Part shown: positions 4,625-55,284 of the stretch, piece after piece
Layout: every line of letters starts with the position of its first letter
Numbering within the stretch: the stretch's first letter is position 1
NCBI RefSeq assembly: GCF_000143415.4
Contig: NW_003314261.1
Location: forward strand, 1,289,674-1,353,673
DNA length: 64,000 nt
Direction of reading: 5' to 3'
Source of the DNA: Selaginella moellendorffii
Taxonomy: Eukaryota; Plantae; Lycopodiophyta
The notes under the pieces: model-generated
Databases searched by the model: none
Told to the model about the DNA's origin: nothing
Seen by the model: the letters and a program-made list of their open reading frames with translations, nothing else
Translations under genes and position numbers: made by a program

Positions 4625-4760
4625 ATTTGACAGACTGACACTGTAACTTTGTCATCTCTAACACTGACACTGTGTCTGTCACTGACACTATCACTGTCGC
4701 TATCTGCTGCACTGACACTGTCAGTGTCACAATCATTATCACATTGACATGTGACACATC
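4625..4760. repeat. Degenerate ~6-bp tandem array (ACTGAC/ACTGTC-like), next to a C18 tract at 4538-4555
   Basis: gactgacactgtaac..actgacactgtgtctgtcactgacactatcactgtc. Mirrored at ~51035-51140, with G19 at 51214-51232. Confidence 0.8.
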
Positions 4761-4929
4761 TTTCTCATTGCAAGTGGATGCATTCAATTGTCTTTTAATG
4801 TATCATTAATAAATAGATTTTTCATACCACTCCTCAATTTACACATTGCATATGATGTGCCATGCATACCTAGGAAGACTTCTAGAAAACTAAATATATA
4901 TTATTTATAAGTTTTTAAAACATCATAAA

Positions 4930-7900: not shown

Positions 7901-8441
7901 GTAGCTCCACTTTTCTTTCAGCTTCAGCTACACCTCCAGTAACACCATTATCAGATCTAGCCCCCGACTCGGGCCCAACACCGCCATCAAGCGCACTTGG
8001 GCACTGCTCCATTTCTGCCATATTTTGTGAATATGTTAAGAGTAGTGGCATTTGTGGTTGTGGCAGCAATGGTAGTGATGACAATGGTTGCACTGGTGGT
8101 GGTGATGATGGTGGCGGTGGTGGTGGTAATGGTGGTGATGATGGTGGTGGTGGTAATGGTGGTGATGACGGTGGTGGTAATGGTGGTGATGAAGGTAACG
8201 GTGGCGGTGGTGGTAATGGTGGTGGAGGTGGTGGCGGTGGTAATGGTGGTGGTGGCATCGATGGCGGTGGTGGGGGTGGTGGGGGTGCATGTGGACTGAA
8301 GCTATCTGGTTGAGAAGACAGTAGAGTTGTCGCTGTGGAAATCTTTATCTGAAGGTCAACTTGATTGTCATCCTGGATCTCATCTTCCTCATGTCTTCTC
8401 TTTGATCCAATATCCCTCTCCTTTTGTAGTTGCTTCCATTT
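4930..8441 (-). pseudogene. Multi-exon ParB/Srx-like domain + beta-class N6A/N4C DNA methyltransferase fusion (copy A)
   Basis: Pro-rich N-region, then IIREIPLCRF..IVRS and FYIIDGNHH* (ParB DGxHR-like), then an acidic linker. The MTase motifs follow in beta order: GIFIGSYISLM (X), NFMLFDMPNG (IV-like), ILFHTTDQVAFI (V/VI), LLELYCPTRGVVIDCTVGSGSMVEAARDSGRSVFAIEE (I/II). Short GT-AG introns and several stops. Confidence 0.75.
8040..8290 (-). repeat. (CCA)n-type trinucleotide tract coding for poly-proline
   Basis: ggt/ggc/gat triplet repeats on the + strand, in frame with ORF 7482-8258. Confidence 0.9.
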
Positions 8442-8549
8442 CTGAAAATAAAGAAAAACTCATTATAAATTATAAATGCATAAGAAGAGGGGAACAGGGC
8501 ATGGTCTCGGTGCAGGCGCCGGTTTGCCAGCGAACCGGGCCACCCCCAA

Positions 8550-35544: not shown

Positions 35545-38229
35545 TATGAAAAGAGAATATAGAAAATATGTATATCAATTAGCCCAAAATATAGCTTATA
35601 TATAGGAACAAATAGTCCAGATTGAAACCAATCTAATAATTACCAAAGTCCCACTATGCTAATATTAATATACGGCATCGTAGGCATGCATTTGGATCTC
35701 ATATCATCTCCTCCTCTTGAAATGATGAAAGACTATCAGGGTTCTTTCGTGGATGGCCCAGGATTTGGAGGAACATCAGGAGGAGGCATTGGTAGATATG
35801 TAGGTGGCGCCAGTTGTTCTTGATCCCTTTGTAAGAAGCATTTTAGCCATTGCATATGCACAATTTCTAGAGGATCGGCCTATTGGATGTCATGCCAAAC
35901 CTCATAAGCTTGTAATCCAATTTGCCGCAACACTTGATATAGTCCTTTGTATTGAGCAAGGAGCCCTTTTGGATAAACCACATATCGTAAGATGGGGAAA
36001 ATGGATTAACACCTAATCATCCACTTTGTACTGTATAAATGGATGATGATGGGAGTTCTAATGTTGTTATCATCCCACTTGTATGCGTCCCAGGTGTTTA
36101 GCAGACTCTACTTGGATAAGTGGAAAGATGCTTGTCAAATACTAATCCCACGACCTAGCATCAATAGCTTGCAACAATTGCAAAGGTAAGCCCAACTTTG
36201 TTCGCAATATTGGATTATGACTATGTAGGAGTTTATATAGTGAAGCACCAACAGAAATCTACACTCTTGTGACATAGGTATACCAAAGAGACGGCAAATA
36301 ACCATCTCAATCTGAATGTTGAAAGTTTGTGTACTTCGCAATCATCCCTTTGAAAGTCCAAACTAGCCGTTCCATCAAACTGTTTAACTGTGGATGATAA
36401 GCACTCTTGAAAGTGTGGTGTATCCCCAATCGAGAATGTAAATGCCGGAATGGCAAGTCATCAGCAAGTGATGTAGAATTCTCAAACCTATCGTAAAGCC
36501 TTCCAATCCATGGCTCAATATTTAGAGCTTCACAAACTTTGTCAAAAGAAGGTAAATCTTGTTCTGCACTTTGTGGACACTAAACGTCAAGTACAACAAC
36601 CGCTGATAGCACGGATTCCTCATCCAAAAATTCCATAAACGTTAGAACAACAAGCTCATCAGAAACATGAGAAGAGAGTTAAGAAGGAAGAGGAGTTCGA
36701 GAAAGGGCATCAGGATCAACCATAGAACTCCCTAGGCGATGAACTACATCAAAATTATATATCTGAAGCTTTATAGCTCATTGAGCAGTATGACCAACTA
36801 AGTTCTTCCACTTCAATAATGAAGTAACTGTAGCATGATCACCTTCTAATAACATCCAAGAGCCATGTAGATATGCATAAAGTTTCTCAAAACAACCAAA
36901 ATATTGCTAAACAATTCTTCTCTATCGTGGAATAGTTCACCTCGAATGGCTATAATGTACGGCTGATATATGCAATAAGATGGCATTGACTAAGCACACT
37001 CGAGCTCTTTTGCATTAACACATCAGAAGCATTTACAAACAAAATGAAAGGTTGAGTGTAGTTAGAATACACCAAAACCAGAGGAGTTGTCAATAGCTCT
37101 TTGAGATTCATAAATGCCCACTCATAGTTTGCAAACTAGATGAAAGATGATGTTAATGACTTTAGCAACACTTATAACAGTGTAGTGCGATAAAAAAGAT
37201 GATCAACAAAATGACCAAGATACTGCACCTTGCTTAAGAAGCATTGCACATCATTCACACACTTCGAAGTAGGAACTTTAGAATAGCTATAAGTTCTTCA
37301 AGATCAATATGCAAACCCTCATGAGAAATATAGTACCCAAGATAAGTTCTGTCCCTAGATCTGAACACACACTTCAACCGCTTTAACTTTAAACTAACTT
37401 TTTGTAGCCGACTCAACACCTTATAAACATCATGGATGTATTCCTCCTACGTCCCCTCTGAGTGGATCAAAACATTATCGATGAAGTCAGTAGCGACCTT
37501 TAGCATATCACAAAAAACCTCTTCCATCATCTGCTAAAAAGTGGCTAAAGTATTGTTCAAACTAAATAACATCACCAAAACTTCATACAAACCAAATAGT
37601 GTATGAAAAACAATTTTAGGAATATCTACTTTAGCCATTAGTATTTGCCAGTACCTAAAAGCAAGATCTAACTTGGTGAATCAATGACTTCTCCCCAGAT
37701 GATCCAAAATATCAGTAGTGCTAGGAAGAGGGTACACATTCAGGATTGTCACTTTATTTAACGGATGATAGTCAATGCAAAAATGAATACTCCCATTAAG
37801 CTTCATCATAAAATGAGGTTCATATGCCCAATGACTTTTGAATAACACCCTTTTCCAATATCTCCTTGATGTTTGCATGTAAAATATTAATCTCTTTGGA
37901 TAATCGACAATGAACTAGAACCTTGATTGGACAAGCATCCTTAGTTGGAATAGGATGACGTGCGGCAATTTTGGCCCCAAATGACAGGTTAAATTCAAAG
38001 AGATCAGCATACTCCTGCAAGAGCTAGTCAACTGCTACAATACAAAGACCATTGGAAGGATTGAAAAAGGGAAGAGAGGAACAACATGAAAATAAAGGAG
38101 GAAGTAATGGGGAGACAAAAGTGATGGAAGTAGAGGAAGTAGAAGGACGAAGGGGTACAAAAGTAGAAGGAATGAAAGAAATATAAGGGAGTATGAAACA
38201 AAAGAGAGAAGCCTTAAAGTTACACTTGG
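35545..38229 (-). mobile_element. 3' half of the host Gypsy element (PR end, RT, RNase H, partial INT, polypurine tract, truncated 3' LTR)
   Basis: FCIDYHPLNKVT..YPLP, FIDNVLI, FVNASD and SAYHPQLNSLMER. Polypurine tract aagaggaggagatga precedes an LTR starting at 35703 that matches 55284 downward. Confidence 0.88.
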
Positions 38230-38829
38230 GAGCATAGACTATACATAAGCTCACGAGTTGAAGAGTTGAGCTTACTAGTTGAGCTCAATTTTCAATTGTA
38301 ATTTAGTAGAAACATTATAAACTTTAAAATTTTAAAGTTATGGTGAACCTAATAATTTCATAACTCTTTATATATTATATAGATAAAAATGTTCTAAAGG
38401 ACACTTCTTGTTCTAATAATTTAAATATTTACTACTTGCAATGATAGGGATGTTTGTTAGAACATAAAATAAAATGCTTGCAAAAAGAGTATTCTTATCA
38501 CTTCTTTAAATTTGTACTTTGTGTTTTCTGGCTAGTAAATGTTAGGTTTGTCAGAATTTTAAAATTATTAAATTGGAATTAAGATTCTATATAAGGATAT
38601 ATAACCATTTAAAAGGAAAAAAAAATAACTGTGATGGTACATATGCTCTCACAATACATTGCAACATCATGCATTCGAAAGATTACCATGAAATATTTTT
38701 TGAGATGGTAAAGACAAAAATGGAGATTCATAAATATTATGGGCAGCATTGCAAAAAGAACCCTCGCAAGTATATGAAATAAAAAGTGAAATAATAAAAT
38801 ATTTTTATTAATTATATAAGGTATAATTA

Positions 38830-41800
38830 GTTTATATTATTGATAGAGAATAAACATCAATAGTGCTGGAAAATCTAATTAGCTCCAAAAGTTTTTTGCA
38901 ACTCGGCAATAGTAAGGCTTGCTTGGTGTATATGAATATCCACTTTAGGATCCTAGTGCAAGATGTTGATGAAGATGTAGTATATATGCTTGCAAAGAGC
39001 ATATGCTTTCCCATGTTCCTCGCGCTTCGTAAAGTCTGGACATGTGCAAGAAGGAAAGTCTTGAATGGCAATTGTGTACTCTCCACCTTCTATTTTGACT
39101 GTGTACTCCTTTGCGAGCGCAGTGTTGTACTTCGTGGAGAGAATCTCACACTCAAATGTTTGAGCCAAGTTTATTTTACCTTTGCTTTTTCTTGGAGACG
39201 TTACCAATAAATTTAACTGCCTTACCTTTTCTCGCTGGCCTCCTATGCATCTCTATAGGAACAGTCCTAGTTTTATCACTCATGTCTCCAACTTTCTTTT
39301 CAAGATTGAAACCAAATTTCTCAAGGTTTTCAATCTCATCTAAGGTGAGCGCAACACCATTAGCAACCAGCCATTCTTTAGGTACTGCATAAGTTTTAGT
39401 CACTATAGTGTTTTCAAGCCGCTTTGTATGGTTGACATCAGTGTTGCAGCAATATAACCAACACCATCTTAAAAATCCTACTTGCTTTCATTCCCCATGG
39501 AAACATGGGGCTAGAACAAAAGCAAACTTGTCACCATAGATCCAAGCCCAACACTTGCCCCTCGGAAGCATCCCCACACACCTTACATTTAATTTTGCTG
39601 GCACTCAACGGACTGCCTATTGCTTCGGCTCCACATTACGATAAGCAATTTCAACCTACTGTGATGCACTCTCTTCATCAGTCACTTGAGGTGGCTCAGT
39701 TCAGGGGCGATGTTTTGGAGCAGAATGATACTCAACATCAGGCCTGTGATAGATTTTTGCTCCAAGATCCGTGCCAACATCTTCACCAACAAAGGAAAAG
39801 CAACGTTTTGAGTAGATGGTCTTCATATCACCAATAGAAGCCCAGGGAGTGTACTCCATAGATGTGCCATGGACCACATCCTCCACTGCAGTTGCCACTG
39901 TTCGTGCTGGTGGAGTCACTTTCTTCTTCATCCGATCGTGTAACATCTCAACCAAAGGTCTTGTTCCCATGTATCTTCCTTCCTCAAATGCCAAGGCTTT
40001 TGAAACTTACTCTACAGTGCATGTCAAATCTGATAGACATGCTTCATATAGACTCATTTTCCCTTTCCCTGCCTCAGAGGAATGCTAGCTCCATTGTTTA
40101 CTTTTTGAGAGATTTCCAGTTGGGGTGTATGCAAGATCCTCAAGTGGTTAATCCTTATAAAAATATGATATTAAAAAGCAATAAAAAGAAAGATAAAAAA
40201 GAAAAACCAACCTGAAAAGAGTGATGTCCCCATTGGAACATTCTAACTTCCCACCACCCCAACCACGACTTAAGTTGTGGTAGACAACTTATGTGAGTAT
40301 GGCCATCTTCACACCACCACATTCGGATCTCATTTGCTTTTGCCTCATGTTCTTCTTCAGAAGGTGCAACCTGCCATTGTTTGCACAACTCCTTAAATGC
40401 TAATTGGAAATCTGGCTTGATAAGGTGGCAGTGCTGGTTTAGGCTCTGAGCCCAATGGAACTCACAAGTCCTCTCACGACCTTCTAGGGGTTGACTATTC
40501 CCAAAGACTGCCCGAACACCATTCTAATTAGCCCCAGCTCCATCTGCCATGAAACCGCGAAAGTTGGCAGGCTTACCAGTCTGCTTCAATACAATGTCAG
40601 AGAGGGACTTCCAAAATATTTCCTGAGCCATCTGGTCTTGTACTTTAAATTTTGCTGTTGCAATTGTCAAGTTACAACGTAGCCTGTGAAAAGCACAATG
40701 CTTAAAACCATTTTAAGATAATGAGAAAACAAACTACCTCAGATCATATACATGAGCTCTCATGGTTGTCCAACCCGCCACCCGCTCCATATGGTCAAAA
40801 TAAACCCATGCATTAGCAAGGTCACTCGACCCAGACATATCTATTTGGGAAACAAGATCCACACCAGAGGTGGGGCCCATGGTAGACATTTTGAAAATGA
40901 AGGGGCGCTCTTGCTCACTAATGACTTGATCTGGAAATAAACTCCTATGGATAAACTCATAGGGACAAGTCCATTTTAGTTCAAGGATTGAGTCGATTTT
41001 TTATTGGAGTTTCCCCTCTCGAGATTCACACATCTAAGACTTTATCCTAAATAAAACAAAATGTAAGAGAGATATTATTGAAAAGTATGTAATAATATTT
41101 TCATACCTCCTGAGGCTAGTTGCAAGTTGCACATGTCGTAGTAACTCTTGCAAGCTAGCCTCATCCAGTTGAGTATTCTTGTAGTCCGGATCAAGTAAAG
41201 TGCTTGCGATAAAATCCTTGAGCACTGTCTTTTGAACATGCTTCGGAGTTGTAGATGAGTTTCTCACAATCTCTATTTGCACTACATCTTTGAAATGGTT
41301 AATTGAACTCCTTTGTATCCCTTCCTGCATTAGATGTGTGTGCATGCTAATATGTACTACAGCTCTACCAGCCTCTCTATCCTGTGGAAGAAAATAATAC
41401 ATCTTGGCCCCACAAATAGCACAACATAATGGAGCATTCTTGCAAAACTGACACTTGAATCTAACACCAATGGTGTCACAGATGGGAGGATTGGTTGCAG
41501 ATCCTTTAAAAAATGTGGAGTTTTTACCACGCTCTCGATTGCATGTTTTATTCACACAATCCAAATACCCACCACAATGAACCATGGACATTGTGCCTTC
41601 AAAATGCTGGAAATGTGTGGTTTTAATCTTGCACCAGTTGTGGACACCTTGCTTCATCTCCATCCCCTTTCGTTTTGAGCTGACAAGAGGTGGTAGTTTA
41701 AAGAAGATATTGGCATTGTATGTAGATGGGAGCTCGCTAACGGGCCTATGTAGAAAGGAACACACGTCGATAGAGAGGCGGGAAAACTAGAAAGCGTTGC

Positions 41801-42050
41801 AAACAACTTTGAATATCGGTGAAGTTGGAGTTTGGAAATTTTTGGCTTACATTGGACTAACATCTCCATTAGAACTAGAAGAGGAAGAAATGATGACGAC
41901 AGACTCTTGCTTCACATTCACTTTAGCAGGATCGCAGCCTCGCACTTTGATTGGAGATCCCAATGTTGTCCACCTTCACCTACACCCGGTAGAAGAAACT
42001 CTGATTGTTCAACTACACCAATATTGTTGCGAATCACAGCCTCCAATGAA
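38830..42050 (-). pseudogene. Mutator-superfamily transposase with GCM-like DNA-binding domain, DDE core and SWIM finger (intron-containing, decayed)
   Basis: HNWCKIKTT..HCGGYLDC..CQFC..CGAK..MHTH, then AWVYFDHMERV (first D), FRGFMADGAGAN (second D), TCEFHWAQS (CxxH), PTGNLSKSKQ (expected E position, read as K) and SWIM CTCPDF...CKHIYY. Confidence 0.88.
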
Positions 42051-43039
42051 ATAGAACCGAAAGAAAGATCGAAACGTCGGCAAAGAAAAATTTCTGAAAT
42101 AAAACTTTAGGAGAAAGAAAGCGGTGTGTGATCTTGGTAATGCAAAAGGAAGCTCTCCATTTTGTTACCTTTAGGTTTTGGAACTCTGAACTTTTGGGCT
42201 ATGCCATTATGTGAAAAGAAAGGGCAATTTTATTCTAGGATCTAACATCAAATAATGTTGTTATAATAAATTTTATATGAAGTATATAGGACTATGTTGT
42301 ACAATATTAAAAGTCTGTATACATTGAATTCAAAAACATGCTCAAATTTATTATATGGACTAACTTTTGGTAAAACGGAAAGAAATATCAACTCAAGCAT
42401 GTGCCATGATATGAAAGATAGGAATGATTTTATTCTATGATCTACCATCAACCAACTGTTGCTAAACAAATTAAATATTGTACATATTTTTAGTACTTCA
42501 TTAAAGCTAAAAATCATCACATTCTTTTGAACTCATTTAAATATATTCCATCTTTGTACTACCATCTATCACCTATAGTAAATTATCTATATACATTGCT
42601 TTGGAAATAACACCTTACGATTTAATAACCTTATATTTTCTAACAAGATGCTATTACTTGCAAGAAACACATAATTCTCATTTATAATTTCGTACTGTGA
42701 TCAGTTCAACACATGCGTCTGTGACATTATTTCACATTATGGCATAGTCATATTAGAGCACACCTCCATTATTAAATTACAACTCAAAAGGACTTTATCA
42801 CATGATCAAATATAGGACGGAATAGAAATTGTACATTGCTAGCAAATATTTGTAGAATGTAATGAAGATTTACTGCATCCACGATGAATGGTTGTGATGA
42901 AAGTTAGGTTAGGGTTAGGGTGGCCACCGGCATTAGGGTTTTACAGAAAGAGATTGGGAGTGACTGCGGGATCCATCAACATTGAACAAAATGCCGCCAA
43001 GAGTAAGTTTTTTCTCCTCCACTCCCTCTCCTTTACTCC

Positions 43040-43369
43040 CATGCCACGCCCAGCGCCGCTGTGCCCAACGCCCTCGCACCCACGCCACGCCCAGCGTCGC
43101 CGCTGCCTAGGGCCACTGAGCGCTGCCCAGCACCACCCAGTGCCAGACCACACCCAGTGCCGTGCTACCTAGGTTCACTGCTGCCCAACACCGCTGCTGC
43201 CATGCCACCGCTGCATGCCCCGTTGCCCAGCATTGCCCACGCCATGCCACGCCCAGTGCCGCGCTGCCTAGGGCTGCTGCTGCCCAGCACTGCTGCTGCC
43301 ATGCCGCCACCGCTGCCACGCCCAGCATTGCCGCCGCCATGCCCAGCACTACCGCTGCCAAGTGCCTGA
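43040..43369 (+). repeat. GC-rich degenerate repeat (Pro/Ala-rich coding potential), probable 5' part of the cargo gene in copy B
   Basis: Recurrent ccacgcccag/ccgctgc units at the position equivalent to the Pro-rich region of copy A. Cut by the LTR at 43370. Confidence 0.45.
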
Positions 43370-44657
43370 TGTAGTGCACATGGTTTTTACCCTTTATCCT
43401 ATGGTGTTCTACCATAGGATAACACCACGAAACAGAACCTAAACCCTCTTTGTGCCACGTGACAGATGCCATGTGTCACATGCCTCGTGTCCATAGGATA
43501 GTGGTGTGGAACCCAAGGTTCAGGGCCTTGGGCCACTGAATGAAAGAACGGTGCCAAACTCCCAAGCATGGAGCCAAGGAGTGATGGAAGCGAACCACGG
43601 AGCAACTCCTGAACATACAGCCCAAGGAGCAAAGGGGCAGGGGCATGGAGTGACTTGGAACAGTCCTAGAATATCCAGCATTCCAATGCCAGGACCAGCA
43701 CGCAAAATGGAGCCAAATGAAGTCTGGCGCTATTTCGGCATATTAGTGGCCTAACGTGAGGATATGGGTACCCCACCAACTAGCATGGTACGGAACTTGG
43801 GCTTAGACCCAAGCCAGACGCAGAACAAGGACAAGCATGCAAACGGAAGCTAGACTATGCCTCATGTTAGTTGGCCATGCTTGACCTACCCACTATCACG
43901 CTTTGGGCTTTCACCCCAAGCCTCCCTTAGTACCAAGAGTTAGTCTCTGGGACAAGCTCAAAACTTACTAAATATGGAATGTTTCTAGATTGAAAATTTG
44001 GACACGAGACGAACACCATTGTGTTTAGGACAATCTCTATATTCCGTAGATATGCCAAATGAGCAAATCTGAACACTTTCCATAAATAGCATTTGGGACC
44101 GAAATGAGACTAACACAAAGGGCACGATAGCGAGGGTGTTTGGCAGACACGGTAGGCTATCATATAGCAAATATTGAGGGGGTTCCCAACACTAGCAAGT
44201 GCAAGTCAACAAATGAATTTCTCTAACCAAGTCAAGTATGCTTGACTAAATAGACACTTAGGAATTCCTTCTTTATGCTGATCTGGTCAAGTGCACATGC
44301 GAAAACCAGTTTCTCAACTAGCTTAGGCAGAGACTGATAACAAGTTCAGCAATACCGATCTCCTGCCATCATGGCAGTAAGGTAAGAGTGTCCGTAAGGA
44401 CTGGCCGATAGGTAACTTTCGATACCTAAAGTCACATTCGCAACACCTGGGCTGAGCATTTGGCCGGGCACTCCGCCTGGGCCGGCCATGGCAGGCCGGT
44501 ACGCCGGTAAACCAGCGCCCGCGCCAAGTCTCCGCAGGTTGGCAAAGGCACTTGGGGGCGGGCCGGTGCCCGCACCAAGTGCCTGTGCCAAATGCCCATG
44601 TCGGGCATTTGGCGCAAGCCAGCCAAGGCAATTGGGGGTGAGCCCGTTCGCCAGAGA
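43370..44657 (-). mobile_element. Truncated LTR nested in MULE copy B
   Basis: Near-identical to 48441-49717 and begins TGTAGTGCACATGG. Joined to the cargo gene at ~44657. Confidence 0.88.
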
Positions 44658-47600
44658 GGTCATCAAGATGCCAATAGATGGTACAAGAATCCAGTGGCTT
44701 TTATGATAGCTGTGTAGACTAAGGTATGTTCTTCCAAGTATACTTCTTATCATAGAATGTTTGTGTTGTCTTCAGCCATTGGTGAAGGTTAAGCAAGATG
44801 CATATGCACAGTCATATGGAGCTGAAAATGATTAAGAACTCTTGGAGCATTTAGTTGCAATTGACAAGAAAATCAACAACACAAAGAAGATAAAGGTAAG
44901 GAAATTACTTAGTGTGGTTGACCTCAACCAGGTTAAAGGAGTGGTTTGATATTATAATAGAGATTGCTTGTCATGAAAGTAAGTATTATTTGTGTTTACA
45001 TGAAGGTTACTCACAAAAGTTATTTCTTAGTGGGCAAGATTCCAGATGAGATTATTTACAACATCTCAAAGTCAAAGCTTACATATGCGGAACAGATACA
45101 CATTCTGAATGACCTCAATAGCAAACTCAAGGAAGGAGAAAAAGGTTTGGACAGTATGATGGAGACTATGATGAGGAGGACCGTCTACATTTCACTATAT
45201 ATGAAGGGGAGATGTTTCTAGCACCTTTCATAGGGGATGATTCTGAGCAACTTCCATTTAAAGATTTTGTCACCACTGAGCATACAAAACTCGGAAAGGA
45301 TTCCACAACCACGACTCCATTTGATAAACAACTTGGCCAACCTTACTTCATGTGTCGAGTGGCTTTTAGGTAACATACAATTTCTCAACTATACTCAATT
45401 TGTTTATATTCTATTATAGGTATCTCCAATATAGAGGCGTTCCTCTCGAAACACTGGTATGCACATGACTCCTGAGGCATGGTGTGAGAGATGGAGGCAT
45501 GTACCCGACAACAATGAAGTTTCCAGCAGCAATAAAGCAAGCTTGTCCTTGGGAATTGGAGATGCTAAATTATGCACCAACCCACCGAGAGGCTGCAAGA
45601 GGCAACAATGAAGATGTGCTAGATGATGAAGATGATGGCCATGAGAATGTCGACACTGTTGGTGCCAATGGCGAGGAGAGTGAAGATGGTAGTGAGAATG
45701 AGATTCCTCAAGACGAAGTTGAGAAAGAGAACCAGAACGTCCAAGAAGTTCTACCTCGAAGAAAGCATGCAAATCCACATCTGGAGGAATTAGTCAACAG
45801 TGATGATGGTCATCCAAGACGTGCCCGTAATCAAAGTCAAAGATAATGATATCTAAGAGTCTTAATTATCAGTGATTAAATCTTAGATTAGAACACAAAA
45901 GTATTCCAAGTAAGTTATCATCCGATAAACCAATATTATAGTATAGGAACCACCAAGATCACTATAGTTGGAAAACATAGAATGCACTATCCAACAAAAT
46001 TGAATAGCAAGTATATCATCAAGTAAACTCAATAATTAAACTTAACTATCAAAAATTGCAGATAGAATGCTAAACAACTCATAAAAGACAACTATAAGAA
46101 CACAAAGTATCATTAACAGACAAGCAAAATGCTCGCAAATGTATCACCTAAATTTAACAACATTCAAACCTATTAAAATCAACCTAATCAACAGAACAGA
46201 ATGAATGTTGCAAAACAAACAAACTCTAATTCATGCTAACTATCGCACTAGCGAATCCAAATAAATCCCAGTCAATAATACTAAGGAACTCAAATTGCTT
46301 AAACAAGGGTCAGCAACTTCCTACTGATGTCTTAAACCCAAGAAACCAATTCAGAGCAAACCACAAAGAACATGTGGTAATACAAAAAGCCAAAAACCAT
46401 CAAAGAGAATAACAAATTATCATGAAAGATCATCAATCATCTTATCAATGAAGAAATGCATAATCATTGCTGAAGAAAGAATCCACCATCCCGGAGAATG
46501 GCATATCATTCTAAATCAACAACAATCAAGCAAAACCTTTGACAAGGATAATCAAACATCCTAGATGATAGTCAATCATCACTAATGGTTTGCCAGATGC
46601 AAATACCAACTTCAATATCGAAGCTAATGCGCAAAAATGCTTTCCCCAACAACTTCTAACAAATGGAACAATGAGCATAAAAACTCAAGGAACCAAAAGC
46701 TCCAAAATGCCTATAGCCAAGTCTCTCATAATAATAATCATAAGTTTCACATGAACTAACTTTAATGCGAAAGAAGAAATCATGGTATAACCCACAATAT
46801 CCTCCTCAACACATCCATAAGCTAAACTTCATAATGCCAAAGCTAATGAAAAGTATATTTGCATCAATCCAAAAGCCAAGCACAATGAAATTATGCTCAA
46901 CAAGTGATCACCAAACTATCCTCCATGAATCCATCTATAGCAAGACGTAACTCACTTCATAACAAACACAAGAAAAAATCATCAATAATCTATATATCCC
47001 AACTCAAATCTAATAAAGATTCAAACATCTCAATATTGATCATTAACTCTTCATCTCATAAAACTAGCATAGTCCATGACTGAATCACTTTTCAAGGAAA
47101 AGCTCAAATCTCAACCCTGACTAAGCAATCTTGTCTAGAACACAACTAAATCAAACTTACTACTCAGTTCATTTGAACGTCAATATAGTTGCTAACTAGC
47201 AAATGCACGAATACCAATAACACAAAACCACAACCAAATCATTAATACTATCTCCATCAAGACTAATGAAACTCAATATCAATCTTACAAAAAACATTTC
47301 ATCCCACTTGAATCTCAACATCAATAATATCAATGATAGGGCATCACTTCAATGCCATCAACACTAGAACAAAGCTAGAAGAAAGAAAGAGTGAATCACC
47401 ACTCAAAACTCTCTTAGCAACTAAGTTAACCAAAGTCGAAGATACTTTAGTTAGTATCCGAGACTAATCCTCCTCACATACTCAGCTACAGAACACATAT
47501 TATCAAAGAGTGATTCACCACATCCAAAACTCCATAAAATCCAACACCCACAAACTAAACGTAACCAAATGATATCAACAAAAGAATCGATATGCCAACA

Positions 47601-50600
47601 TAGAAAACCATGCAAGCCACGACACGATCCTCCACAACACCACTCGGTAAAGCAAGCCCATCATTACTAAATCATCATCGAGTGAAGCAAGTGTCAACTG
47701 TCTTTGACAAACTTTACAAGAAATCACTAATTGCAAAGCAATTAACAATCACTCTTCAACTTGCCTTCACAAAACTCAAACATTAAACTCACATCATCGA
47801 GTCATATAATTGTTTAGTATGAATATAATACCCTATATATGAGATATTAGCTCACGAACAGGCACAAACTAAATGACCACTCGAATCCAACTCAACTGCA
47901 ATAAGCTCACTAATGCATTTAGCCTATAGCTCTGAGCATGCCTTGAAGAAGCTAGCTATGCATAATCAACACTTAGCCGAAACTAAAGTGAAGACCATGA
48001 GATGAACTTATATCAATACACAACATTCTCACTAACAAAGCTATATAATAGACCAGCCTATTTGCCACTCTTTGCAAACCTAGGGAAGGTTTACTTTCAC
48101 CCATGGTACATGGAACAACTCATGGAACCATTGGAACAACTTATGGAACCATCGGCCAACTCAAAGTATAACCTTGAGTTGCTAATATGCCTCACTCATG
48201 AGCCCAAGTGCAAACTCGTGCAAAATGATACACCTCAAATCCATCCTATGAGCCCAAGAGCAAGCTCACATCATAAGGTACAACATGGTAACTAAATCCA
48301 TACCTAAGGAACGATTGTGAAGTCTTTGCACCCAAACGTGTACCCACTTGGATCATTGTTTTCGTCTCTGCGTATGCAATGAGACTAGTTGTCCAATCTC
48401 ATTGAGTAGTACTCGCTGAGACTCATTCTTTGATACCAAATGTAGTGCACATGGTTTTTACCCTTTATCCTATGGTGCTCTACCATAGGATAACACCACG
48501 AAACGGAACGTAAACCCTCTTTGTGCCACGTGACAGATGCCATGTGTCACATGCCACGTGTCCATAGGACAGTGGTGTGGAACCCAAGGTTCAGGGCCTT
48601 GGGCCACTGAATGAAAGAACGGTGCCAAACTCCCAAGCATGGAGCCAAGGAGTGATGGAAGCAAACCATGGAGCAACTCTTGAACATACAGCCCAAGGAG
48701 CAAAGGGGCAGAGGCATGGAACAGTCCTAAAATATCCAGCATCCCAATGCTAGGACCAACATGCAAAATGGAGCCAAACGAAGTCTGGCGCTATTTCGGC
48801 ATATTGGTGGCCTAACGTGAGGATATGGGTACCCCACCAACTAGCATGGTACGAAACTTAGGCTTAGACCCAAGCCAGACGCAGAACAAGGACAGGCATG
48901 CAAATAGGAGCTAGACTATGCCTCATGTTGGTTGGCCATGCCCGACCTACCCACTATCACGCTTTGGGCTTTCACCCCAAGCCTCCCTTAGTACCAAGAG
49001 TTAGTCTCTGGGACAAACTCGAAACTTACTAAATATGGAATGTTTCTAGATTGAAAATTTGGACACGAAACGAACACCATTGTGTTTAGGACAATCTCTA
49101 TATTCCGTAGATATGCCAAATGACCAAATCTGAACACTTTCCATAAATAGCATTTGGGACCGAAATGAGACTAACACAAAGGGCATGATAGCGAGGGTGT
49201 TTGGCAAACACGGTAGGCTATCATATAGTGAATATTGAGGGGGTTCCCAACACTAGCAAGTGCAAGTCAACAAATGAGTTTCTCTAACCAGGTCAAGTAT
49301 GCTTGACTAAATAGACACTTAGGAATTCCTTCCTTATGCTCATCTGGTCAAGTGCACATGCAAAGACCAGTTTCTCAACTAGCTTAGGTAGAGACTGATA
49401 ACAAGTTCAACAATACCGATCTCCTGCCATCATGGCAGTAAGGTAAGAGTGTCCGTAAGGACTGGCCGATAGGTAACTTTCGATACCTAAAGTCACATTC
49501 GCAACACCTGGGCTGAGCATTTGGCTGGGCACTCCTCCTGGGCCGGCCATGGTAAGCCGGTACGCCGGTAAACCAGCACCCGCGCCAAGTCTGCGCAGGC
49601 TGGCAAAGGCACTTGGGGGTGGGCCGGTGCCCGCACCAAGTGCCTGTGCCAAATGCCCGTGCCGGGCATTTGGCGCGAGCCAGCCAAGGCAATTGGGGGT
49701 GAGCCAGTTCGCCAGAGAACCGGCTCACCCTCAATTGCCAAGTCCAAGTGCCCAGGCTAGGCACTCCGTGTGGGCTGGCAAAGGTGTTTGGGGGCAGGCC
49801 AACACCCGTGCCAAGTCCCTGCGCCAAGTGCCTGTGCCGAGCATTTGGCACGAGCCGGCCAAGGGACTTGGGGGCGAGCCGGCGCCTGCACCAAGTGCCA
49901 AGGCCAAGCGCCCGCACTAGGTATTTGGGGTGAGTCGACCTTGGCACTTAGAGGCGGGCTGGTTTGCTGGCAAGTTCACATCTTATCTTTGTCTTCTCCC
50001 CCTAGATTCACCTTATTTCTCTGGTGGCATTCCATGGTGAAGTTGGGATCTTTATTGGCTCCTACAATTCATTGATGGCATCTTTCAAGGAGGATGCTAA
50101 GAATATGGCTATCCGGCAAAAGTGGGAGCGCTTTTGTCAGAAGATCCATAGGCGACTGCTCAAGAGCACAAACTTCATGCTCTTCGACATGTTAGATGGT
50201 CTTCTAGACATTAATGGTGATGTCCCAAGCTGGAACAACTTGACTAAAGACCACTTGAAGGATGCATTCCTTTTGGCAGCAATTCTCCTTCACACAACCG
50301 GTCAAGTTGCTTTCATTCTCCCAAATGACCCCTATTGGATGTCCTACCTTATGAAGTATGCAACTCGAGTGAACTTCAAAAGGTCCTCTTCCAAGTGCAT
50401 CATGGATAGTCTTGGGGTCGAGATCAAAAGCATCCTAGGCATGCCAGAGAAGGTAAGAAATTATCTTCTGTTTTAGTTGTCTTTAAAGTTTCATTATTCA
50501 AGTTATGATGTGGACCTACCATATGTTCTGCAAAAGAGAAAAGAGAAAATGACGGTTTTCATGATAGCGAATGTGCTGCAAGGGTTTTGTTAGGGTATGA

Positions 50601-50868
50601 TAGCTTTATTGACATCATATCAAATCTTGTAGACAACAACATCCACAACACATTGTCTGGGTATCGGTTCCGATCTCCATCAGTGATGCATATCCTACTT
50701 GAGCTTTATTGCCCAACTAGGGGTGTTGTCATCGATTGTACAGTAAGTAGTGGTTCGATGGTCGAAGCAGCATGTGACTCTAGTAGATCGGTGTTTGTGA
50801 TTGAAGAATATGAGTTCTTCAAACGCCGTCTTAGAGGTTCTTCTTTATCAGTTACTTCTAGGAGGTAA
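44657..50868 (+). pseudogene. ParB-MTase gene copy B (middle exons 44657-45829, MTase exons 49972-50868), interrupted, ParB part deleted
   Basis: Collinear with the reverse complement of 4930-7180. Reads NFMLFDMLDG and LLELYCPTRGVVIDCTVSSGSMVEAACDSSRSVFVIEE. Confidence 0.8.
45830..49971 (-). mobile_element. LTR retroelement fragment: 5' LTR (48441-~49971), PBS and non-coding or decayed internal region
   Basis: On the minus strand the LTR ends ...CTACA at 48441 and is followed by TT-TGGTATCAAAG (Met-tRNA-type PBS). The internal region is strongly strand-skewed with no long ORF. Confidence 0.85.
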
Positions 50869-51319
50869 TTTATGATGTTTTAAAAACTTATATATAATAT
50901 ATATTTAGTTTTCTAGAAGTCTTCTTAGGTATGCATGGCACATCATATGCAATGTGTAAATTGAGGAGTGGTATGAAAAATCTATTCATTAATGATACAT
51001 TAAAAGACAATTGAATGCATCCACTTGTAATGAGATAATGATTGTGACAGTGATAGTGTCAGTGCAGCAGATAGTGACAGTGATAGTTTCAGTGACAGAG
51101 ACAGTGTAGAGATGACAGAGTTACAGTGTCAGTTTGTCAAATTTCATAATTACTAGTATTATGAGTTTATTATCTATAGGTAATACAATTTTGTTAATAA
51201 AAAAAAGCCAAAAGGGGGGGGGGGGGGGGGGGCATGAATAATATCAAAGTGTAAGAATTATTAGTAGCTAGAATTTTCAATAGGATGGCCTAAAAATACC
51301 AGATTCAGCACTTGTGGAT

Positions 51320-51755
51320 GTAATATTTACTAACGGAATATTGTTCTTCACCATGAAATGATAATGGTTGTGTGTTCTTAACTCTTTCTTGATTTTCTTA
51401 TACATCCATTTATGCATACCTTCCACATCAATTTTTGGGCAGTTGTGACAATGTTCTAGAAAAGTTTCTCGACCTATACAGTTTTAGCCATATCTAAAGC
51501 AAGATCTTGAAGAAACATCTGGCATCGCTCTTGAAGCACATGAGGCAATCCATCTTTAGTGACAACATCTAGAACATTATTTGAAAGAGGGATCTCTTGT
51601 TTAGTCACACTTGAGGCTACAAAAGAAAAAGCCTCACAACAATTGTTGTGTGGAGGGAAGGGTGGAATGTTGGTAGAAGTTGGGGATGAAGGTGGAAACT
51701 CATATGAAATGCATGGGGGCCAAGTACGAGTAGCAATAACATTTTCCTTAGCCAT
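51320..51755 (-). pseudogene. MULE cargo gene 2 (copy B)
   Basis: MAKENVIATRTWPPCISYEFPPSSP..GLPHVLQERCQMFLQDLA, then after a deletion LEHCHNCPKIDVEGMHKWMYKKIKKEL. Confidence 0.55.
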
Positions 51756-52014
51756 TTCTACACTCTAAATAAATTGAAATTTCAATATTGAAAGCATCCC
51801 TTGTCGGATTTATACTAAGAAAAGATCTAGGGGTTTTTGAAAGTTTAAATTGTCAATCTCAAAATAGGACTTTAGAATTATAACAGTGTTAGAACCACTT
51901 GTATATATAATAATATCTTTATACATGCTAGAATACTATCATTCTCGAAAATATAAGATTCTCCACTTTACTCATAAAGAATTAAACTTTTGAAAAAACT
52001 ATGTATGACTTTCA

Positions 52015-52566
52015 CAATACAATAAAGGGTGACTTAAATATTCTATATTCAACACTTATTGATGTAGTGTTCACTAATGGAATATTGTTCTCCAACATGA
52101 AATCATAATACCTGTGTGTTTTTAATTTTTTCTTGATTTTCTTATACATCTACGCATGCACACCTTCCAAACCCACTCTTGGGCATTTGCGACAATGCTT
52201 AATAAAATTTACCAAACCCATGCAACCATCTATCTTGTTTAAATAAAAGTTACATATAAGACACTGAAGATAATATGTATTTACATTAAGCTCTCCTACC
52301 ATATCTGAAGCAAGATCTTGAAGAAAATATTGACATCGCTTTTGGAGCATTGGAGGCAATCCAACTCTTTTAACAACATTATAAAGAAGGAATTCTTGTT
52401 CAATTGCACTCGAGGTCACAAATGGAAAAGCCTCACAATAGCCATCAAAATGAAAAGGAAGATTGTTGCATAGAGATGAAGGTGGATTATTGGTTGAGAT
52501 TGGAGATGGAGGTGGAGACTCATATGAAAGGCCTCCGGGACCAAAAATAAACTTCTTCCTAACCAT
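52015..52566 (-). pseudogene. MULE cargo gene 1 (copy B)
   Basis: ORF 52150-52578 with YYLQCLICNFY..KHCRKC. Stop at the position of W in copy A. Confidence 0.55.
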
Positions 52567-53664
52567 TGCAACACACAAGAAAAATTAAACTTCCCAGCAA
52601 TAAGAATTCTCTGATTAATATACTATATTTCAATCTCAGGAATGATGTTTTATTATGACATGACAATATATTGAATCATAATTGTTAGTCTTAGTAATTA
52701 CAACCTACTATGAAAGACAAGTGGCTATAGGGTTTCAGAAGCTAAAAACTAGCATATAATTAATACAAAGTCTTATTTTATATAGCTAGCCTGCTATATA
52801 TAATAATGGTGAATATACACAGGCATGCGAGTATGCCTTTTTGCAAGATTACCTTTCAATCCCAAAATTATATATAAATTTAACTCTTTGATTTATCCAT
52901 ATCATATATACTTACACTCTTTGCAAAGACAAAACATATCAAAAGGAATAAGATATATATAAAAAACCTACTTTTTTTATAATATTTTAGTGGATTACAA
53001 AAGCCATTGAAAGTTTATAGAGTGGATTTATTAATGCTTTCCACTATGCTGTCTATTTCTTATTTTCTCTTGCTTTGGATTGTTGTTTCGGAAGTAACAG
53101 GAGCATGTTTATCAATACTAACAGTAGTCTCCACATTCCCGGATGGGTAATAAGAACCAGACATGTAATATGGAAATTGTGGTAGTGAAACAAAATTAAC
53201 ATTCTCACATTTCTGTATGCTAGAACTACTTACAATTTTTTTGTCTTCCTTGCTTCCCATCTCTATAAACCCTAAAGAATGAACGAGTGAATCAATGTTT
53301 TGAATTATTTATATATTTCTGGTCAATTGTTGAAATGTTAAAATGTTGAAATGTACAATAGAAATTTTAGGTTCATTCGAACTTCAATATTCCCATTTTA
53401 TTTGGGACCAATAAAGCCCAAAAATTTCTATGGTTCAAATAAACTTCTAATTCTAGAAACAGTATTTTATTGTATAAATTGCATTAGAAAGATTCAAAAA
53501 ATAAAAATTTCTCTGAACCATTGATACTTAAATTCATAAATTTCAAGTTCACCAAAGAATAACATTTTTCTGACTTAATATCTCCTTATAAGACTTATAG
53601 TTAACTATGTTGACTAGCATTGACTTAAGCTAAATTGAGCTCAACTCAACTTTAGACCATCCCC

Positions 53665-55284
53665 ACACTTGGCATGATTGCGCTGCAATCAATCTATACC
53701 AAGGATGAGGTCAAAAGTTTTATTTACCACCAAATGCAATGACTGCAACTCAAATTTGAGATTGCCCATACACATAACTAGGTCCACCTCATCCCACGCA
53801 CATGCATGTGTACAGCCATTTCCATAAAAAATGAAAATTGGCTCTGCCACATGACACAAATGTAGATGGCAATGTGTGGTAACAAGTCGAGCAATAGAAG
53901 ATAAACTCGAATCTATATCAACCAACATAGAAAGAATAATAGGAGACCTCTTATAAAAACGAGTTTAGAAAGTAAATATTGGATGAGCTTGTGCTAAGTG
54001 AACCCCTGATGATACTCCCAAATGAAAAATAGAGGGGTCACTGACTTATTCACATAAGGTCCTTCCACTACTCATGCGACTCCTCATTTCCCAGATGTAT
54101 CTGAATGTCCAAAAATTCCACTACAGCAGCACTAATAGGACATTGTTAACACCAAGGTCTCCACCCAGAAAATGGAGGTTGCCATCCAAAAAACGTTGAC
54201 AATGCCAATAAATGTGACCAACTTCATCACACACCCAATAGTAGACATCACGGCCACAACTATGTCCATGCCCTTGTCCTTAAACTCAAGCAATAGCAAC
54301 ATCAACCACCATTGAAATAGGACCATCTCCCACAGGAAGTGGAGCTAAAACATGTGTAATGAGAAGTGAAAGAGGTGATATTTTAGAACATTGTGTCAGG
54401 TGAAGAGCATCATCAAGGGTGGGTGGAGCAAGTGCATGCATAAGTCCTACAAGATCTTGACAAAATGCTAGCCACAACATTCCTAGTTTGATCTGCTTTA
54501 ACATATTTAGCTCCGCACGAAGTAAGAGGCTTCAGAAATAAATGCCAAATTCTATCACCGACTTAGATGGCCCTTAATGAAGATGATGTAATTGTTGGAA
54601 AGCATCATTACAATCGTCGACATATCTAAATGCATGTTTAAAGATATCCGAAAGAATACTTCAATTACCACAAATGACTGCATTCAAACACATAGGAAAC
54701 TTATATAAACATTGAGTATCATCCTAAAAATGATGTGTGGCAATCACCATGAAGTGATCAAACCAATAGTACACATCATCCCTAGGATTCCCACAAAGAG
54801 CTCCGGCTGAACGCGAGGATTGGCAGCAAGAGTAAGAGGAGCTTTACCATGCACCATAAATGCTACTATCAATTAAGTTTGGTTGTTCAATTACAATCGC
54901 ATAACATCAAACAATTGCACTAATTGCTACTCCAAAGTTAAAGGAGTAGGAGATTGTTGCTCTACCATGCAGATGAATGAAAAGAAAAGAGCAAAAGAAA
55001 AGAAATGAAAAAAGCTAGAAGGAAAGAGAGATCTAGACGATGCAAAAGTTAAATCTAAACCAAAATCTCAAATTCAAGCACTCTTTAAGGACAATCAAAG
55101 TTGCCCCTCACCTCCACCAATATGAGTGTATGGATATGGAAAGAGAATACATATCAATTAGCCCAAAAACTTTAACTTATATACAGAAGCAAGTGATCTG
55201 GATTGAAACAAATCTGATGGCTAACAAAATCCCATCACACTAATATTAGTATACAACATTGTAGCTATACACTTGGATCTCATA
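53665..55284 (-). mobile_element. 5' half of the host Gypsy element (5' LTR ~54970-55284, gag, protease)
   Basis: LTR matches 35545-35703. PBS-like TGGTAGAGC at ~54967. Gag-like GDDVYYWFDHF, protease MLVDIDS and FDLILGID*LQRNHAKC. Confidence 0.82.

What the first reader, a model, noticed from the sequence alone, without database searches (positions are those of the whole stretch)
38230..53664. A Mutator-like transposon family carrying its own ParB-fused amino-DNA-methyltransferase and accessory genes
Seen: one TSD-bounded unit holds a GCM/DDE/SWIM transposase (-), a divergently oriented spliced MTase-fold gene (+), a short-motif array and two paralogous Cys/His genes (-). The whole cargo arm recurs in a second copy at 2196-8500, so it is a family trait and not a one-off capture. 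Established: MULEs with poor terminal inverted repeats can carry accessory genes (Ulp1 proteases, VANDAL VANC anti-silencing factors), while beta-class amino-MTases are typical of prokaryotes and phages. Inference: this may be a plant DNA transposon with a self-encoded DNA-marking or anti-silencing module (6mA/4mC), or a vehicle for horizontally acquired MTases. I cannot check whether it is already catalogued.
Basis: partly seen in the sequence, partly recalled or inferred. Interest (0 to 1): 0.92.

Follow-up and report, generated by a model that had tools for sequence, protein, structure and literature searches.

The report
Mutator transposon with ParB–methyltransferase-like passenger gene
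This stretch holds two decayed copies of a plant "Mutator-like" jumping gene whose family carries, next to its transposase, a second gene resembling a bacterial/phage ParB–DNA-methyltransferase fusion. The same gene pair occurs in the lycophyte Selaginella, so it is an old family trait, of a kind so far described only in algae.

Summary
Bases 38230-53664 are an insertion with an 8-bp target duplication (ACACTTGG) inside one Ty3/Gypsy pol gene. It contains a Mutator-type transposase (minus strand), a divergent spliced gene with a beta-class amino-methyltransferase fold (plus strand), and two tandem Cys/His ORFs. The cargo arm recurs, inverted, at 2197-8459.

The decisive new evidence comes from Selaginella moellendorffii. 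Three loci there carry the same transposase (42-62% amino-acid identity) directly upstream of, and divergent from, the same ParB-like/MTase-like gene (26-52%). The linkage is therefore ancient, not a recent capture.

- **MTase fold:** well supported. Foldseek top hits are CcrM, M1.HpyAVI and MboIIA (E about 1e-8); PADLOC gives E 2.5e-7.
- **ParB/Srx domain:** only weakly supported, by a DGNHR motif and TIGR03187 at E about 0.005 in two paralogues.
- **Catalytic loop:** D-[L/M]-P-[D/N]-G replaces DPPY, while the SAM-binding motifs are kept. Methyltransferase activity is therefore doubtful.

Both window copies are dead, through stops, frameshifts and nested LTR insertions; unit B lacks the ParB exon. 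They are essentially untranscribed. The family is high-copy.

ParB–MTase accessory genes on DNA transposons are already published for brown, red and green algae. This is therefore a new variant in vascular plants on a MULE, not a new category. The same scan flagged ParB-like transposon cargo elsewhere in this genome.

The parts
38222..38229 (.). Left copy of the 8-bp target-site duplication ACACTTGG
   Evidence: the flank is Gypsy pol
38230..38330 (+). Left terminus of unit B, with the subterminal palindrome TTGAGCTCAA at 38279-38288
38956..41786 (-). Mutator-type transposase pseudogene. The N-terminal Cys/His finger region is at 41037-41786, the DDE/CxxH core at 40158-41000, and the SWIM finger at 38956-39252. 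There are at least 5 in-frame stops.
   Evidence: SWIM E 6e-4; MULE look-alikes; stops; 42-62% aa identity to Selaginella copies
43369..44657 (+). Nested LTR-like repeat R1. It joins to exon 2 of the cargo gene at a short stretch of microhomology, and the ParB exon is missing upstream of it.
44656..45830 (+). Middle exons of the ParB-MTase-like gene in unit B, with at least two frameshifts relative to copy A
45831..49971 (+). Nested insertion: an A-rich segment plus the second LTR-like repeat R2 (48440-49718, 95% identical to R1). It replaces about 177 bp, including one exon that copy A retains.
49972..50868 (+). MTase-like domain of unit B in two open exons, 50006-50473 and 50509-50865. The loop reads FDMLDG in place of DPPY, and the motif I sequence is VIDCTVSSGSM.
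51040..51140 (.).
51280..52584 (-). Two tandem paralogous Cys/His ORFs: gene 2 at 51280-51764 (decayed) and gene 1 at 52015-52584 (one stop)
   Evidence: (D11)
53565..53664 (-). Right terminus of unit B (GGGGATGGTC...), with the palindrome at 53635-53644. It is 94% identical to the copy A terminus at 2197.
53665..53672 (.). Right copy of the TSD ACACTTGG
2197..8459 (-). Copy A, the cargo arm only, truncated against a Gypsy integrase at 8466. Contents:
- terminus at 2197;
- Cys/His ORFs at 3256-3825 and 4078-4450 (+);
- MTase-like domain at 4933-5789 (-), with one frameshift and one stop;
- middle exons at 5793-7347;
- ParB-like exon at 7347-8459 (-), with two in-frame stops.
   Evidence: (PF01555 E 2.3e-4)

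Best explanation
The window holds two dead copies of a high-copy Mutator-like (MULE) DNA transposon family of a vascular plant.

**Inferred intact element (about 11 kb).** This is reconstructed by combining the two copies:
- poor terminal inverted repeats, each with a subterminal TTGAGCTCAA palindrome;
- an 8-bp TSD;
- a transposase with an N-terminal zinc finger, a DDE/CxxH core and a SWIM finger;
- divergently transcribed from it, a multi-exon accessory gene of roughly 800-850 codons.

**The accessory protein.** It has an N-terminal ParB/Srx-superfamily-like domain (DGNHR motif, closest to the DGQHR/DndB type). A conserved helical middle region follows. The C-terminus is a circularly permuted beta-class amino-methyltransferase fold.

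**Shown.** The gene pair is inherited together: the same pair, in the same orientation, occurs in Selaginella moellendorffii. The MTase-like domain keeps the SAM-binding loop (D-x3-G-x-G-S) and the following acidic strand end. It has replaced the base-contacting DPPY loop with a family-wide D-[L/M]-P-[D/N]-G.

**Inferred.** The protein most likely acts as a transposon-specific DNA-binding, SAM-binding accessory factor. Possible roles are self-recognition, or help with transposition or escape from silencing. I consider it unlikely to be a conventional N6A/N4C DNA methyltransferase.

**The two window copies.** Unit B inserted into a Gypsy pol gene and was later broken by LTR-type insertions or rearrangement. 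Copy A is a fragment lacking the transposase. Both carry stops and frameshifts and are essentially untranscribed.
For: **Boundaries**
- TSD and Gypsy pol continuity across the empty site.

**Transposase**
- SWIM finger, MULE look-alikes, and 42-62% aa identity to Selaginella copies.

**Linkage**
- In L002 and L004, and rearranged in L001, the transposase (-) lies directly upstream of the ParB exon, middle exons, MTase-N and MTase-C (+).
- These loci share 87-93% DNA identity across both genes.

**MTase fold**
- PF01555 E 2.3e-4 on copy A.
- A family profile hits the DpnA-type MTase 5hek first.
- AF2 model (pLDDT 58, core 70-89). The top 50 Foldseek PDB hits are all amino-MTases. The best ones, and most of the rest, are beta-class DNA enzymes, led by CcrM at E 1e-8.
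- AFDB clusters give N4/N6 DNA methylases.
- PADLOC mad2 E 2.5e-7 and MTase_II E 5e-5.

**ParB**
- The DGNHR motif is conserved.
- TIGR03187 DGQHR is the top hit at E 0.004-0.008 in two paralogues that are 32% identical.
- Atlas look-alikes include ParB_N and DUF6551 clusters.

**Selection**
- dN/dS 0.53, p 0.006, plus deep motif conservation.

**Copy number and silence**
- 4311 DNA contigs laid at 88% identity or more, and 4 RNA reads.

**Decay**
-.
Against: - No HMM reaches a curated threshold: PF01555 scores 21.6 against 26.7 bits, and TIGR03187 about 16-17 against 58.9.
- The ParB-region structure prediction failed (pLDDT 41), so the ParB fold is not shown.
- The MTase model is only moderately confident.
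- The intact element is inferred from two broken copies. No intact copy was seen.
- The left terminus has no independent second copy.
- PF10551 (MULE) did not hit the transposase pieces.
- Nothing here tests function. A non-canonical loop does not prove inactivity.
- One intact Selaginella homologue (LOC9661604) lies among ordinary host genes with no transposase within 10 kb. The original direction of transfer, host to TE or TE to host, is therefore open.
Confidence: 0.8

Rival explanations
1. The accessory protein is a working DNA amino-methyltransferase. It marks the element's own DNA with 6mA or 4mC, is targeted there by the ParB-like domain, and so promotes transposition or counteracts 5mC silencing.
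For: - The beta-class DNA MTase fold.
- SAM-binding motif I and the acidic motif II residue are conserved from this plant to Selaginella.
- The variant loop is itself conserved, and therefore selected.
- Published algal transposon proteins with ParB and PF01555 domains are interpreted this way (PMC12477816).
Against: - The loop lacks the second proline and the aromatic residue of (D/N/S)PP(Y/F/W), which stacks on the flipped base. By established MTase biochemistry, comparable changes mark inactive paralogues such as METTL14.
- Land plants are reported to have few N6A DNA MTases (PMC4738411).
- There is no methylation or expression evidence here.
Confidence: 0.2
2. The MTase-like gene is a host gene that a MULE picked up, Pack-MULE style. 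It is a passenger without a role in the element's life cycle.
For: - Introns are retained.
- An intact stand-alone homologue lies in a gene-dense Selaginella region without a transposase.
- The accompanying Cys/His ORFs evolve neutrally and have no Selaginella counterpart.
Against: - The full-length gene keeps the same position and orientation relative to the transposase in two very distant plants, with both genes diverged to a similar degree.
- dN/dS between TE copies is below 1.
- Pack-MULE captures are usually fragments, and recent.
- Any capture must be ancient, with the gene maintained since.
Confidence: 0.08
3. The transposase and the cargo arm are two independent repeats that merely lie side by side in this window.
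For: - Copy A has the cargo arm without a transposase.
- A third, divergent MULE transposase at 15958-19616 has no cargo gene beside it.
- The termini are poor inverted repeats.
Against: - The same adjacency recurs in three Selaginella copies.
- A single TSD and an interrupted Gypsy pol bracket both genes.
- Copy A is visibly truncated at a junction with a Gypsy integrase.
Confidence: 0.04

Closest known systems
ParB-like + DNA-methyltransferase accessory proteins of algal DNA transposons. Examples: Sola1-1_Ec32 of Ectocarpus (PMC12477816); PAG2 (PF01555+SET) and PAG3 (ParB+2OG oxygenase) of red-algal Plavaka, Mutator and Zisupton elements (bioRxiv 10.1101/2025.02.11.637652); and the chlorophyte ParB-HTH+Dam family (PMC4738411).
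   Same: - A eukaryotic DNA transposon carries a large accessory gene on the strand opposite to the transposase.
- That gene combines a ParB-type domain with a PF01555-type amino-MTase domain.
- Copies are mostly degenerate and weakly expressed.
   Different: - The host is a vascular land plant (plus Selaginella), not an alga.
- The carrier is a MULE with an 8-bp TSD.
- The catalytic loop is D-[L/M]-P-[D/N]-G rather than DPPY.
- No array of palindromic sites was found, only one TTGAGCTCAA per end.
Phage and plasmid ParB-MTase fusions (ParB_N PF02195 + N6_N4_Mtase PF01555), such as those in ParB-terminase loci.
   Same: Same domain order: ParB-like N-terminus and beta-class MTase C-terminus. 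The best structural matches are bacterial enzymes of this class.
   Different: - The plant gene has several spliceosomal introns and a long conserved middle region.
- It has a non-canonical motif IV.
- Sequence similarity falls below the family thresholds.
VANDAL (non-TIR MULE) elements of Arabidopsis and their VANC anti-silencing protein.
   Same: A MULE with poor terminal repeats that carries an extra gene plausibly acting on its own DNA or chromatin.
   Different: As far as I know, VANC has no ParB or MTase fold. It binds arrays of short motifs, and no comparable array exists here. No functional data exist for this family.
Bdelloid rotifer N4CMT (structure 8s9m), a horizontally acquired beta-class amino-MTase that marks transposons (PMC8885841).
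   Same: A beta-class bacterial-type amino-MTase fold in a eukaryote, linked to transposon biology. It is among the structural hits (rank 27).
   Different: N4CMT is a host gene with a chromodomain and an intact SPPY-type catalytic loop. It is not carried by a transposon.
DndB / DGQHR-domain proteins (TIGR03187) of the ParB/Srx superfamily.
   Same: The only HMM that matches the N-terminal domain. The match is centred on the D-G-x-H-R motif.
   Different: Scores are far below the family cut-off, and the rest of the domain is not recognisably aligned.

Membership tests
Mutator superfamily (MULE) DNA transposon | Transposase with a DDE core carrying the C/DxxH signature after the second D | tested here: met
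   FMADGAGAN ... CEFH is read directly in 40158-40712. 75 of 100 Atlas look-alikes of this piece are PF10551 MULE clusters.
Mutator superfamily (MULE) DNA transposon | Pfam MULE (PF10551) or Transposase_mut HMM match | tested here: not met
   No hit at E <= 0.1 on any of the seven ORF pieces. The gene is split by stops, so only short pieces could be scanned.
Mutator superfamily (MULE) DNA transposon | C-terminal SWIM zinc finger | tested here: met
   PF04434 E 6.3e-4, 19.7 bits against a cut-off of 19.6.
Mutator superfamily (MULE) DNA transposon | TSD of 8-11 bp | tested here: met
   8-bp ACACTTGG on both sides. Gypsy pol is continuous across the empty site.
Mutator superfamily (MULE) DNA transposon | Long terminal inverted repeats | tested here: not met
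   Only weak subterminal similarity (z about 3) and a shared 10-bp palindrome. This is compatible with non-TIR MULEs.
Mutator superfamily (MULE) DNA transposon | N-terminal WRKY/GCM1-type zinc finger | tested here: inconclusive
   A Cys/His pattern is visible in 41037-41786 and is conserved in Selaginella, but there is no HMM hit.
Beta-class (permuted) amino-methyltransferase, PF01555 | Fold: Rossmann-like MTase with motif IV N-terminal to motif I | tested here: met
   Foldseek PDB top hits are CcrM, M1.HpyAVI, M.BceJIV, MboIIA, PvuII and RsrI, E 1e-8 to 1e-5. AFDB clusters agree. The model has moderate confidence.
Beta-class (permuted) amino-methyltransferase, PF01555 | Curated HMM threshold | tested here: not met
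   Best score is 21.6 bits against 26.7. P0003 scores 13.8 bits. PADLOC MTase models give E 2.5e-7 and 5e-5.
Beta-class (permuted) amino-methyltransferase, PF01555 | Motif I SAM-binding loop (FxGxG) and the acidic residue after the next strand | tested here: met
   D-x3-G-x-G-S-M followed by ..A[IL]E.. in all members.
Beta-class (permuted) amino-methyltransferase, PF01555 | Catalytic motif IV (D/N/S)-P-P-(Y/F/W) | tested here: not met
   D-[L/M]-P-[D/N]-G in most members with that region; unit B reads DMLDG, having lost the proline. It lies at the end of the predicted strand 67-73.
ParB/Srx superfamily | D-G-x-H-R motif at the end of the core sheet | tested here: met
   DGNHR in Selaginella P0009, P0010 and P0011 (L001 exon: NGNHR). 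Copy A reads DGNHH followed by an in-frame stop.
ParB/Srx superfamily | HMM or fold match | tested here: inconclusive
   - TIGR03187 E 0.004-0.008 in two divergent paralogues.
- No PF02195 hit.
- The profile search against PDB found nothing.
- The AF2 model is unusable (pLDDT 41).
Algal-type transposon ParB-MTase accessory gene | ParB-like plus PF01555-type domains in one accessory protein, encoded opposite to the transposase inside the element | tested here: met
   Architecture in copy A together with unit B, and in Selaginella L002, L004 and L001.
Algal-type transposon ParB-MTase accessory gene | Common descent with the algal proteins | not tested
   The algal sequences were not at hand. An exhaustive phmmer search with the MTase-N exon found only Selaginella proteins.

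The most novel reading that the evidence does not exclude
An ancient MULE lineage of vascular plants has co-evolved with a ParB-like/SAM-binding MTase-like protein. That protein recognises the element's own subterminal palindrome and chemically marks or shields the element's DNA, as a self-targeted epigenetic or anti-silencing device. It has been domesticated at least once as a host gene (Selaginella LOC9661604).
Probability: 0.2. Interest if true: 0.85.

Novelty: new variant of a known kind. Interest (0 to 1): 0.62.

Why it matters
- **TE biology.** Accessory genes that let a transposon act on its own DNA are rare; VANDAL/VANC is the textbook plant case. ParB-MTase cargo has only just been noticed in brown and red algae. 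Finding the same architecture on a MULE in vascular plants, conserved between two distant lineages, would extend the phenomenon to land plants. It would also show that such a gene can ride with one transposase for a very long time.

- **A concrete biochemical question.** The conserved but non-canonical catalytic loop poses a clear choice: pseudo-enzyme, or an MTase with new chemistry.

- **An experimental handle.** Selaginella LOC9661604 is intact and lies among host genes. It can be used for biochemistry, and it is a possible case of domestication.

- **Annotation.** These genes should not be called host 'DNA methyltransferases' in fern or lycophyte-type genomes.

Tried and rejected
- **Pfam on ORF pieces of unit B.** No MTase or ParB hit. 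Only copy A's last exon hit PF01555.
- **phmmer of single exons against PDB.** Nothing.
- **Word-indexed search with the ParB exon.** Nothing in the allowed length range.
- **Atlas on the MTase-N exon.** Uninformative AAA-type look-alikes, which I rejected.
- **ParB exon in unit B.** No counterpart by blastn, tblastx or tblastn, so 'ParB-fused' cannot be read from 38230-53664 itself.
- **AF2 of the ParB region.** Failed. A profile of the ParB region against PDB gave only chance hits.
- **parS-like arrays or other repeated palindromes in the element.** None beyond one TTGAGCTCAA per end.
- **The (GTGACA)n stretch as a VANC-like binding array.** Rejected as a short simple repeat.
- **Cys/His ORFs.** No Pfam family, no Selaginella counterpart, and a neutral dN/dS. 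I do not claim they are functional genes.
- **Shared target site of A and B.** The flanks share CACTTGGCAT next to the same terminus, but the rest of the flanks are unrelated. I treat this as unexplained or chance.
- **RNA evidence for splicing.** Only 4 reads in about 12% of each of three RNA-seq runs.
- **False positives.** Three repeat proteins in the exhaustive search (P0001, P0006, P0007) were discarded.

Full report
**Setting.** The window is repeat-rich plant-type DNA with nested retroelements. A self-comparison shows that 44656-45830 plus 49972-53664 recur, inverted, at 7178-6001 and 5823-2197, with 87-91% identity.

**Boundaries of unit B (38230-53664).**
- The octamer ACACTTGG flanks both ends.
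- The right end coincides exactly with the end of homology to copy A. Their termini (GGGGATGGTC...) are 94% identical, while the flanks differ.
- The flanks belong to one Ty3/Gypsy pol on the minus strand. The protease end lies at 53692-53964; RT and integrase lie at 36310-37914. The spacing is normal once the insert is removed.
- The two termini are poor inverted repeats (score 69 against 48 +/- 6.5 for shuffles). Each carries the palindrome TTGAGCTCAA 20-50 bp inside the end.

**Transposase.** One reading frame runs on the minus strand from 41786 to 40158 and contains five stops. Downstream pieces follow.
- The last piece holds a SWIM finger (Pfam E 6e-4).
- The core shows D...D followed by CEFH, the Mutator signature.
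- Atlas look-alikes of the core are overwhelmingly PF10551 MULE clusters.
- PF10551 itself did not hit the short pieces.

**The cargo gene.** Copy A (minus strand, 8459 to 4933) gives the fullest picture, with canonical GT-AG introns.
- A first exon has a proline-rich start and a domain ending in ..YIIDGNHH. This domain continues in frame through two stops.
- Several middle exons follow.
- The C-terminal domain's last exon hits PF01555 N6_N4_Mtase (E 2.3e-4, below the cut-off).
- Copy A also has a frameshift and a stop in the MTase part.
- Unit B has that part open (50006-50473 and 50509-50865). However, it has frameshifts in the middle exons and has lost one small exon to the 45831-49971 insertion.
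- Unit B has no ParB exon at all. The LTR-like repeat R1 (43369-44657) joins directly to exon 2 at a stretch of microhomology.
- Both window copies are therefore pseudogenes, and the 'ParB fusion' is visible only in copy A.

**Relatives.** An exhaustive phmmer search of 1.84 billion representative proteins, using B's MTase-N exon, found only five real hits. All are hypothetical proteins of Selaginella moellendorffii. A profile search added two more.

I fetched their loci and compared them with the window pieces.
- In L002 and L004, and rearranged in L001, the same transposase (42-62% amino-acid identity per piece, minus strand) lies directly upstream of the cargo gene.
- The cargo gene on the plus strand comprises the ParB exon, the middle exons, MTase-N and MTase-C.
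- These loci are copies of one repeat that spans both genes (87-93% DNA identity).
- The gene pair is therefore conserved between two very distant plants.
- The Cys/His ORFs have no Selaginella counterpart.

**One homologue is different.** LOC9661604 (P0009/P0003, locus L005) is intact. It lies between ordinary host genes (ribosomal L29, a PH/SMP protein, a SINA-type protein, GSH peroxidase, an ABC transporter). No transposase similarity occurs within 10 kb. It is either a domesticated copy or a relic of the source gene.

**What the protein is.**
- *Conserved blocks.* Family alignments show IPLCR..Q..VR.A, F..(D/N)GNHR, APEE.IYNISKS, GWLP, QPGQPF, CPWYLEL, LIGDY..LL, F.FFD.P.G, WN.L...H and ILP.S..W. 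The C-terminal block is D...G.GSM followed by A[IL]E.
- *MTase fold.* An AF2 model of P0003:345-627 (pLDDT 58, core 70-89, pTM 0.61) was searched against the PDB. The top 50 hits are all amino-MTases. The best ones, and most of the rest, are beta-class DNA enzymes: CcrM 1e-8, M1.HpyAVI, M.BceJIV, MboIIA, TTHA0409, rotifer N4CMT, PvuII and RsrI. AFDB clusters give N4/N6 DNA methylases. PADLOC MTase models hit at E 2.5e-7 and 5e-5. A family profile ranks a DpnA-type MTase first in the PDB. The MTase fold is well supported.
- *Catalytic loop.* The loop after the strand ..DF[IV]FFD is D-[L/M]-P-[D/N]-G (DMPNG in copy A, DMLDG in unit B), not (D/N/S)PP(Y/F/W). The SAM-binding loop and the following acidic residue are kept. 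By established MTase biochemistry the aromatic residue and the PP turn hold the flipped base. I therefore infer that this is a SAM-binding but probably non-canonical or inactive enzyme. This is inference, not a test.
- *ParB domain.* Support is weaker. There is the DGNHR motif. There is also a top-ranked but sub-threshold match to TIGR03187 (DGQHR/DndB type, ParB superfamily) in two paralogues that are only 32% identical. Atlas look-alikes include ParB_N. Pfam, a PDB profile search and AF2 gave nothing.

**Selection, copy number and expression.**
- Between copies A and B, the cargo-gene exons give dN/dS 0.53 (31 synonymous and 62 non-synonymous changes, binomial p 0.006). Part of their divergence therefore arose under constraint.
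- Cys/His gene 1 gives 0.94, which is neutral.
- Laying one DNA run's contigs on 2600-8050 placed 4311 contigs at 88% identity or more, evenly along the arm. This indicates a high-copy family.
- About 12% of each of three RNA-seq runs gave 4 reads in total.
- Copy A differs from the family majority mostly by A-for-G and T-for-C. This pattern is expected for C-to-T decay of a methylated repeat.

**Comparison with what is known.**
- A 2015 survey lists few N6A MTases in land plants, and ParB-linked Dam-type enzymes only in chlorophytes and chytrids (PMC4738411).
- In 2025, Dinatale et al. described a 1104-aa ParB-like + DNA-MTase protein encoded opposite to the transposase of Sola1-1_Ec32 in Ectocarpus. 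[quoted passage not shown]
- Petroll et al. described PF01555+SET and ParB+2OG-oxygenase accessory genes on red-algal Plavaka, Mutator and Zisupton elements.
- Two further searches, for Selaginella/Mutator-like and for ParB/accessory-gene/Mutator terms, found no land-plant report in the held library. Repbase and Dfam could not be consulted.
- The kind of system is therefore known. The land-plant MULE carrier, the deep conservation with Selaginella, the altered catalytic loop and the stand-alone Selaginella gene are the new elements.
- First-stage notes of this scan also report ParB/MTase-like cargo on Sola-like and other transposons elsewhere in this genome. I did not test those.

**Verdict.** The 'family trait' claim is strongly supported. 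The 'DNA-marking enzyme' reading is possible but disfavoured. Both copies in this window are dead.

Noticed in passing
window 15958-19616 (-): A third, much more divergent MULE transposase pseudogene, with 26-66% aa identity to unit B's. This is about as distant as the Selaginella copies. No ParB or MTase-like gene was detectable beside it.
   Followed up: partly
L005:10001-13177 (Selaginella GL377567.1, LOC9661604): An intact ParB-like/MTase-like gene among ordinary host genes, with no transposase within 10 kb. It is a candidate domesticated copy, or the source gene, of the transposon cargo.
   Followed up: partly
window 43369-44657, 48440-49718, 33824-34696: An LTR-like repeat family. Two direct copies, 95% identical, lie inside unit B. 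A fold-back made of two inverted copies of its first ~500 bp lies at 33.8-34.7 kb. R1 joins the MULE gene at a microhomology (TTCGCCA), which suggests rearrangement rather than clean insertion.
   Followed up: partly
window 2181-2196 and 53665-53680: The flanks next to the same element terminus in copies A and B both contain CACTTGGCAT, in opposite orientation relative to the element. The rest of the flanks are unrelated. This may be weak target preference or chance.
   Followed up: partly
window 2600-8050: Copy A differs from the majority of family contigs mainly by A-for-G (54) and T-for-C (42). This is the signature of C-to-T transition decay typical of methylated repeats.
   Followed up: no
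window 24300-34000: Large duplicated blocks of about 5.9 kb carry long arrays of a 12-bp unit (GTCCGAGATGGA) and 6-bp units. They show strong GC and AT skew on one strand.
   Followed up: no
window 56555-58200 (+): A GC-rich host-like ORF with an F-box-like motif (..LPEDCVDRILARLP..) and Kelch-like tail, interrupted by a run of N in the assembly.
   Followed up: no
window 8466-12000 (-): A Ty3/Gypsy element (gag, protease, RT, RNase H, integrase) whose integrase end abuts the truncated 5' end of copy A at 8460-8466 with no LTR between. This is a deletion or recombination junction.
   Followed up: partly
AFDB cluster hits of the MTase model: Several hits named 'DNA methylase N-4/N-6 domain-containing protein' have accessions of the A0A388... 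series. From memory this series belongs to the charophyte Chara braunii. If so, streptophyte algae may hold related TE-type MTases. The organism was not shown by the tool.
   Followed up: no
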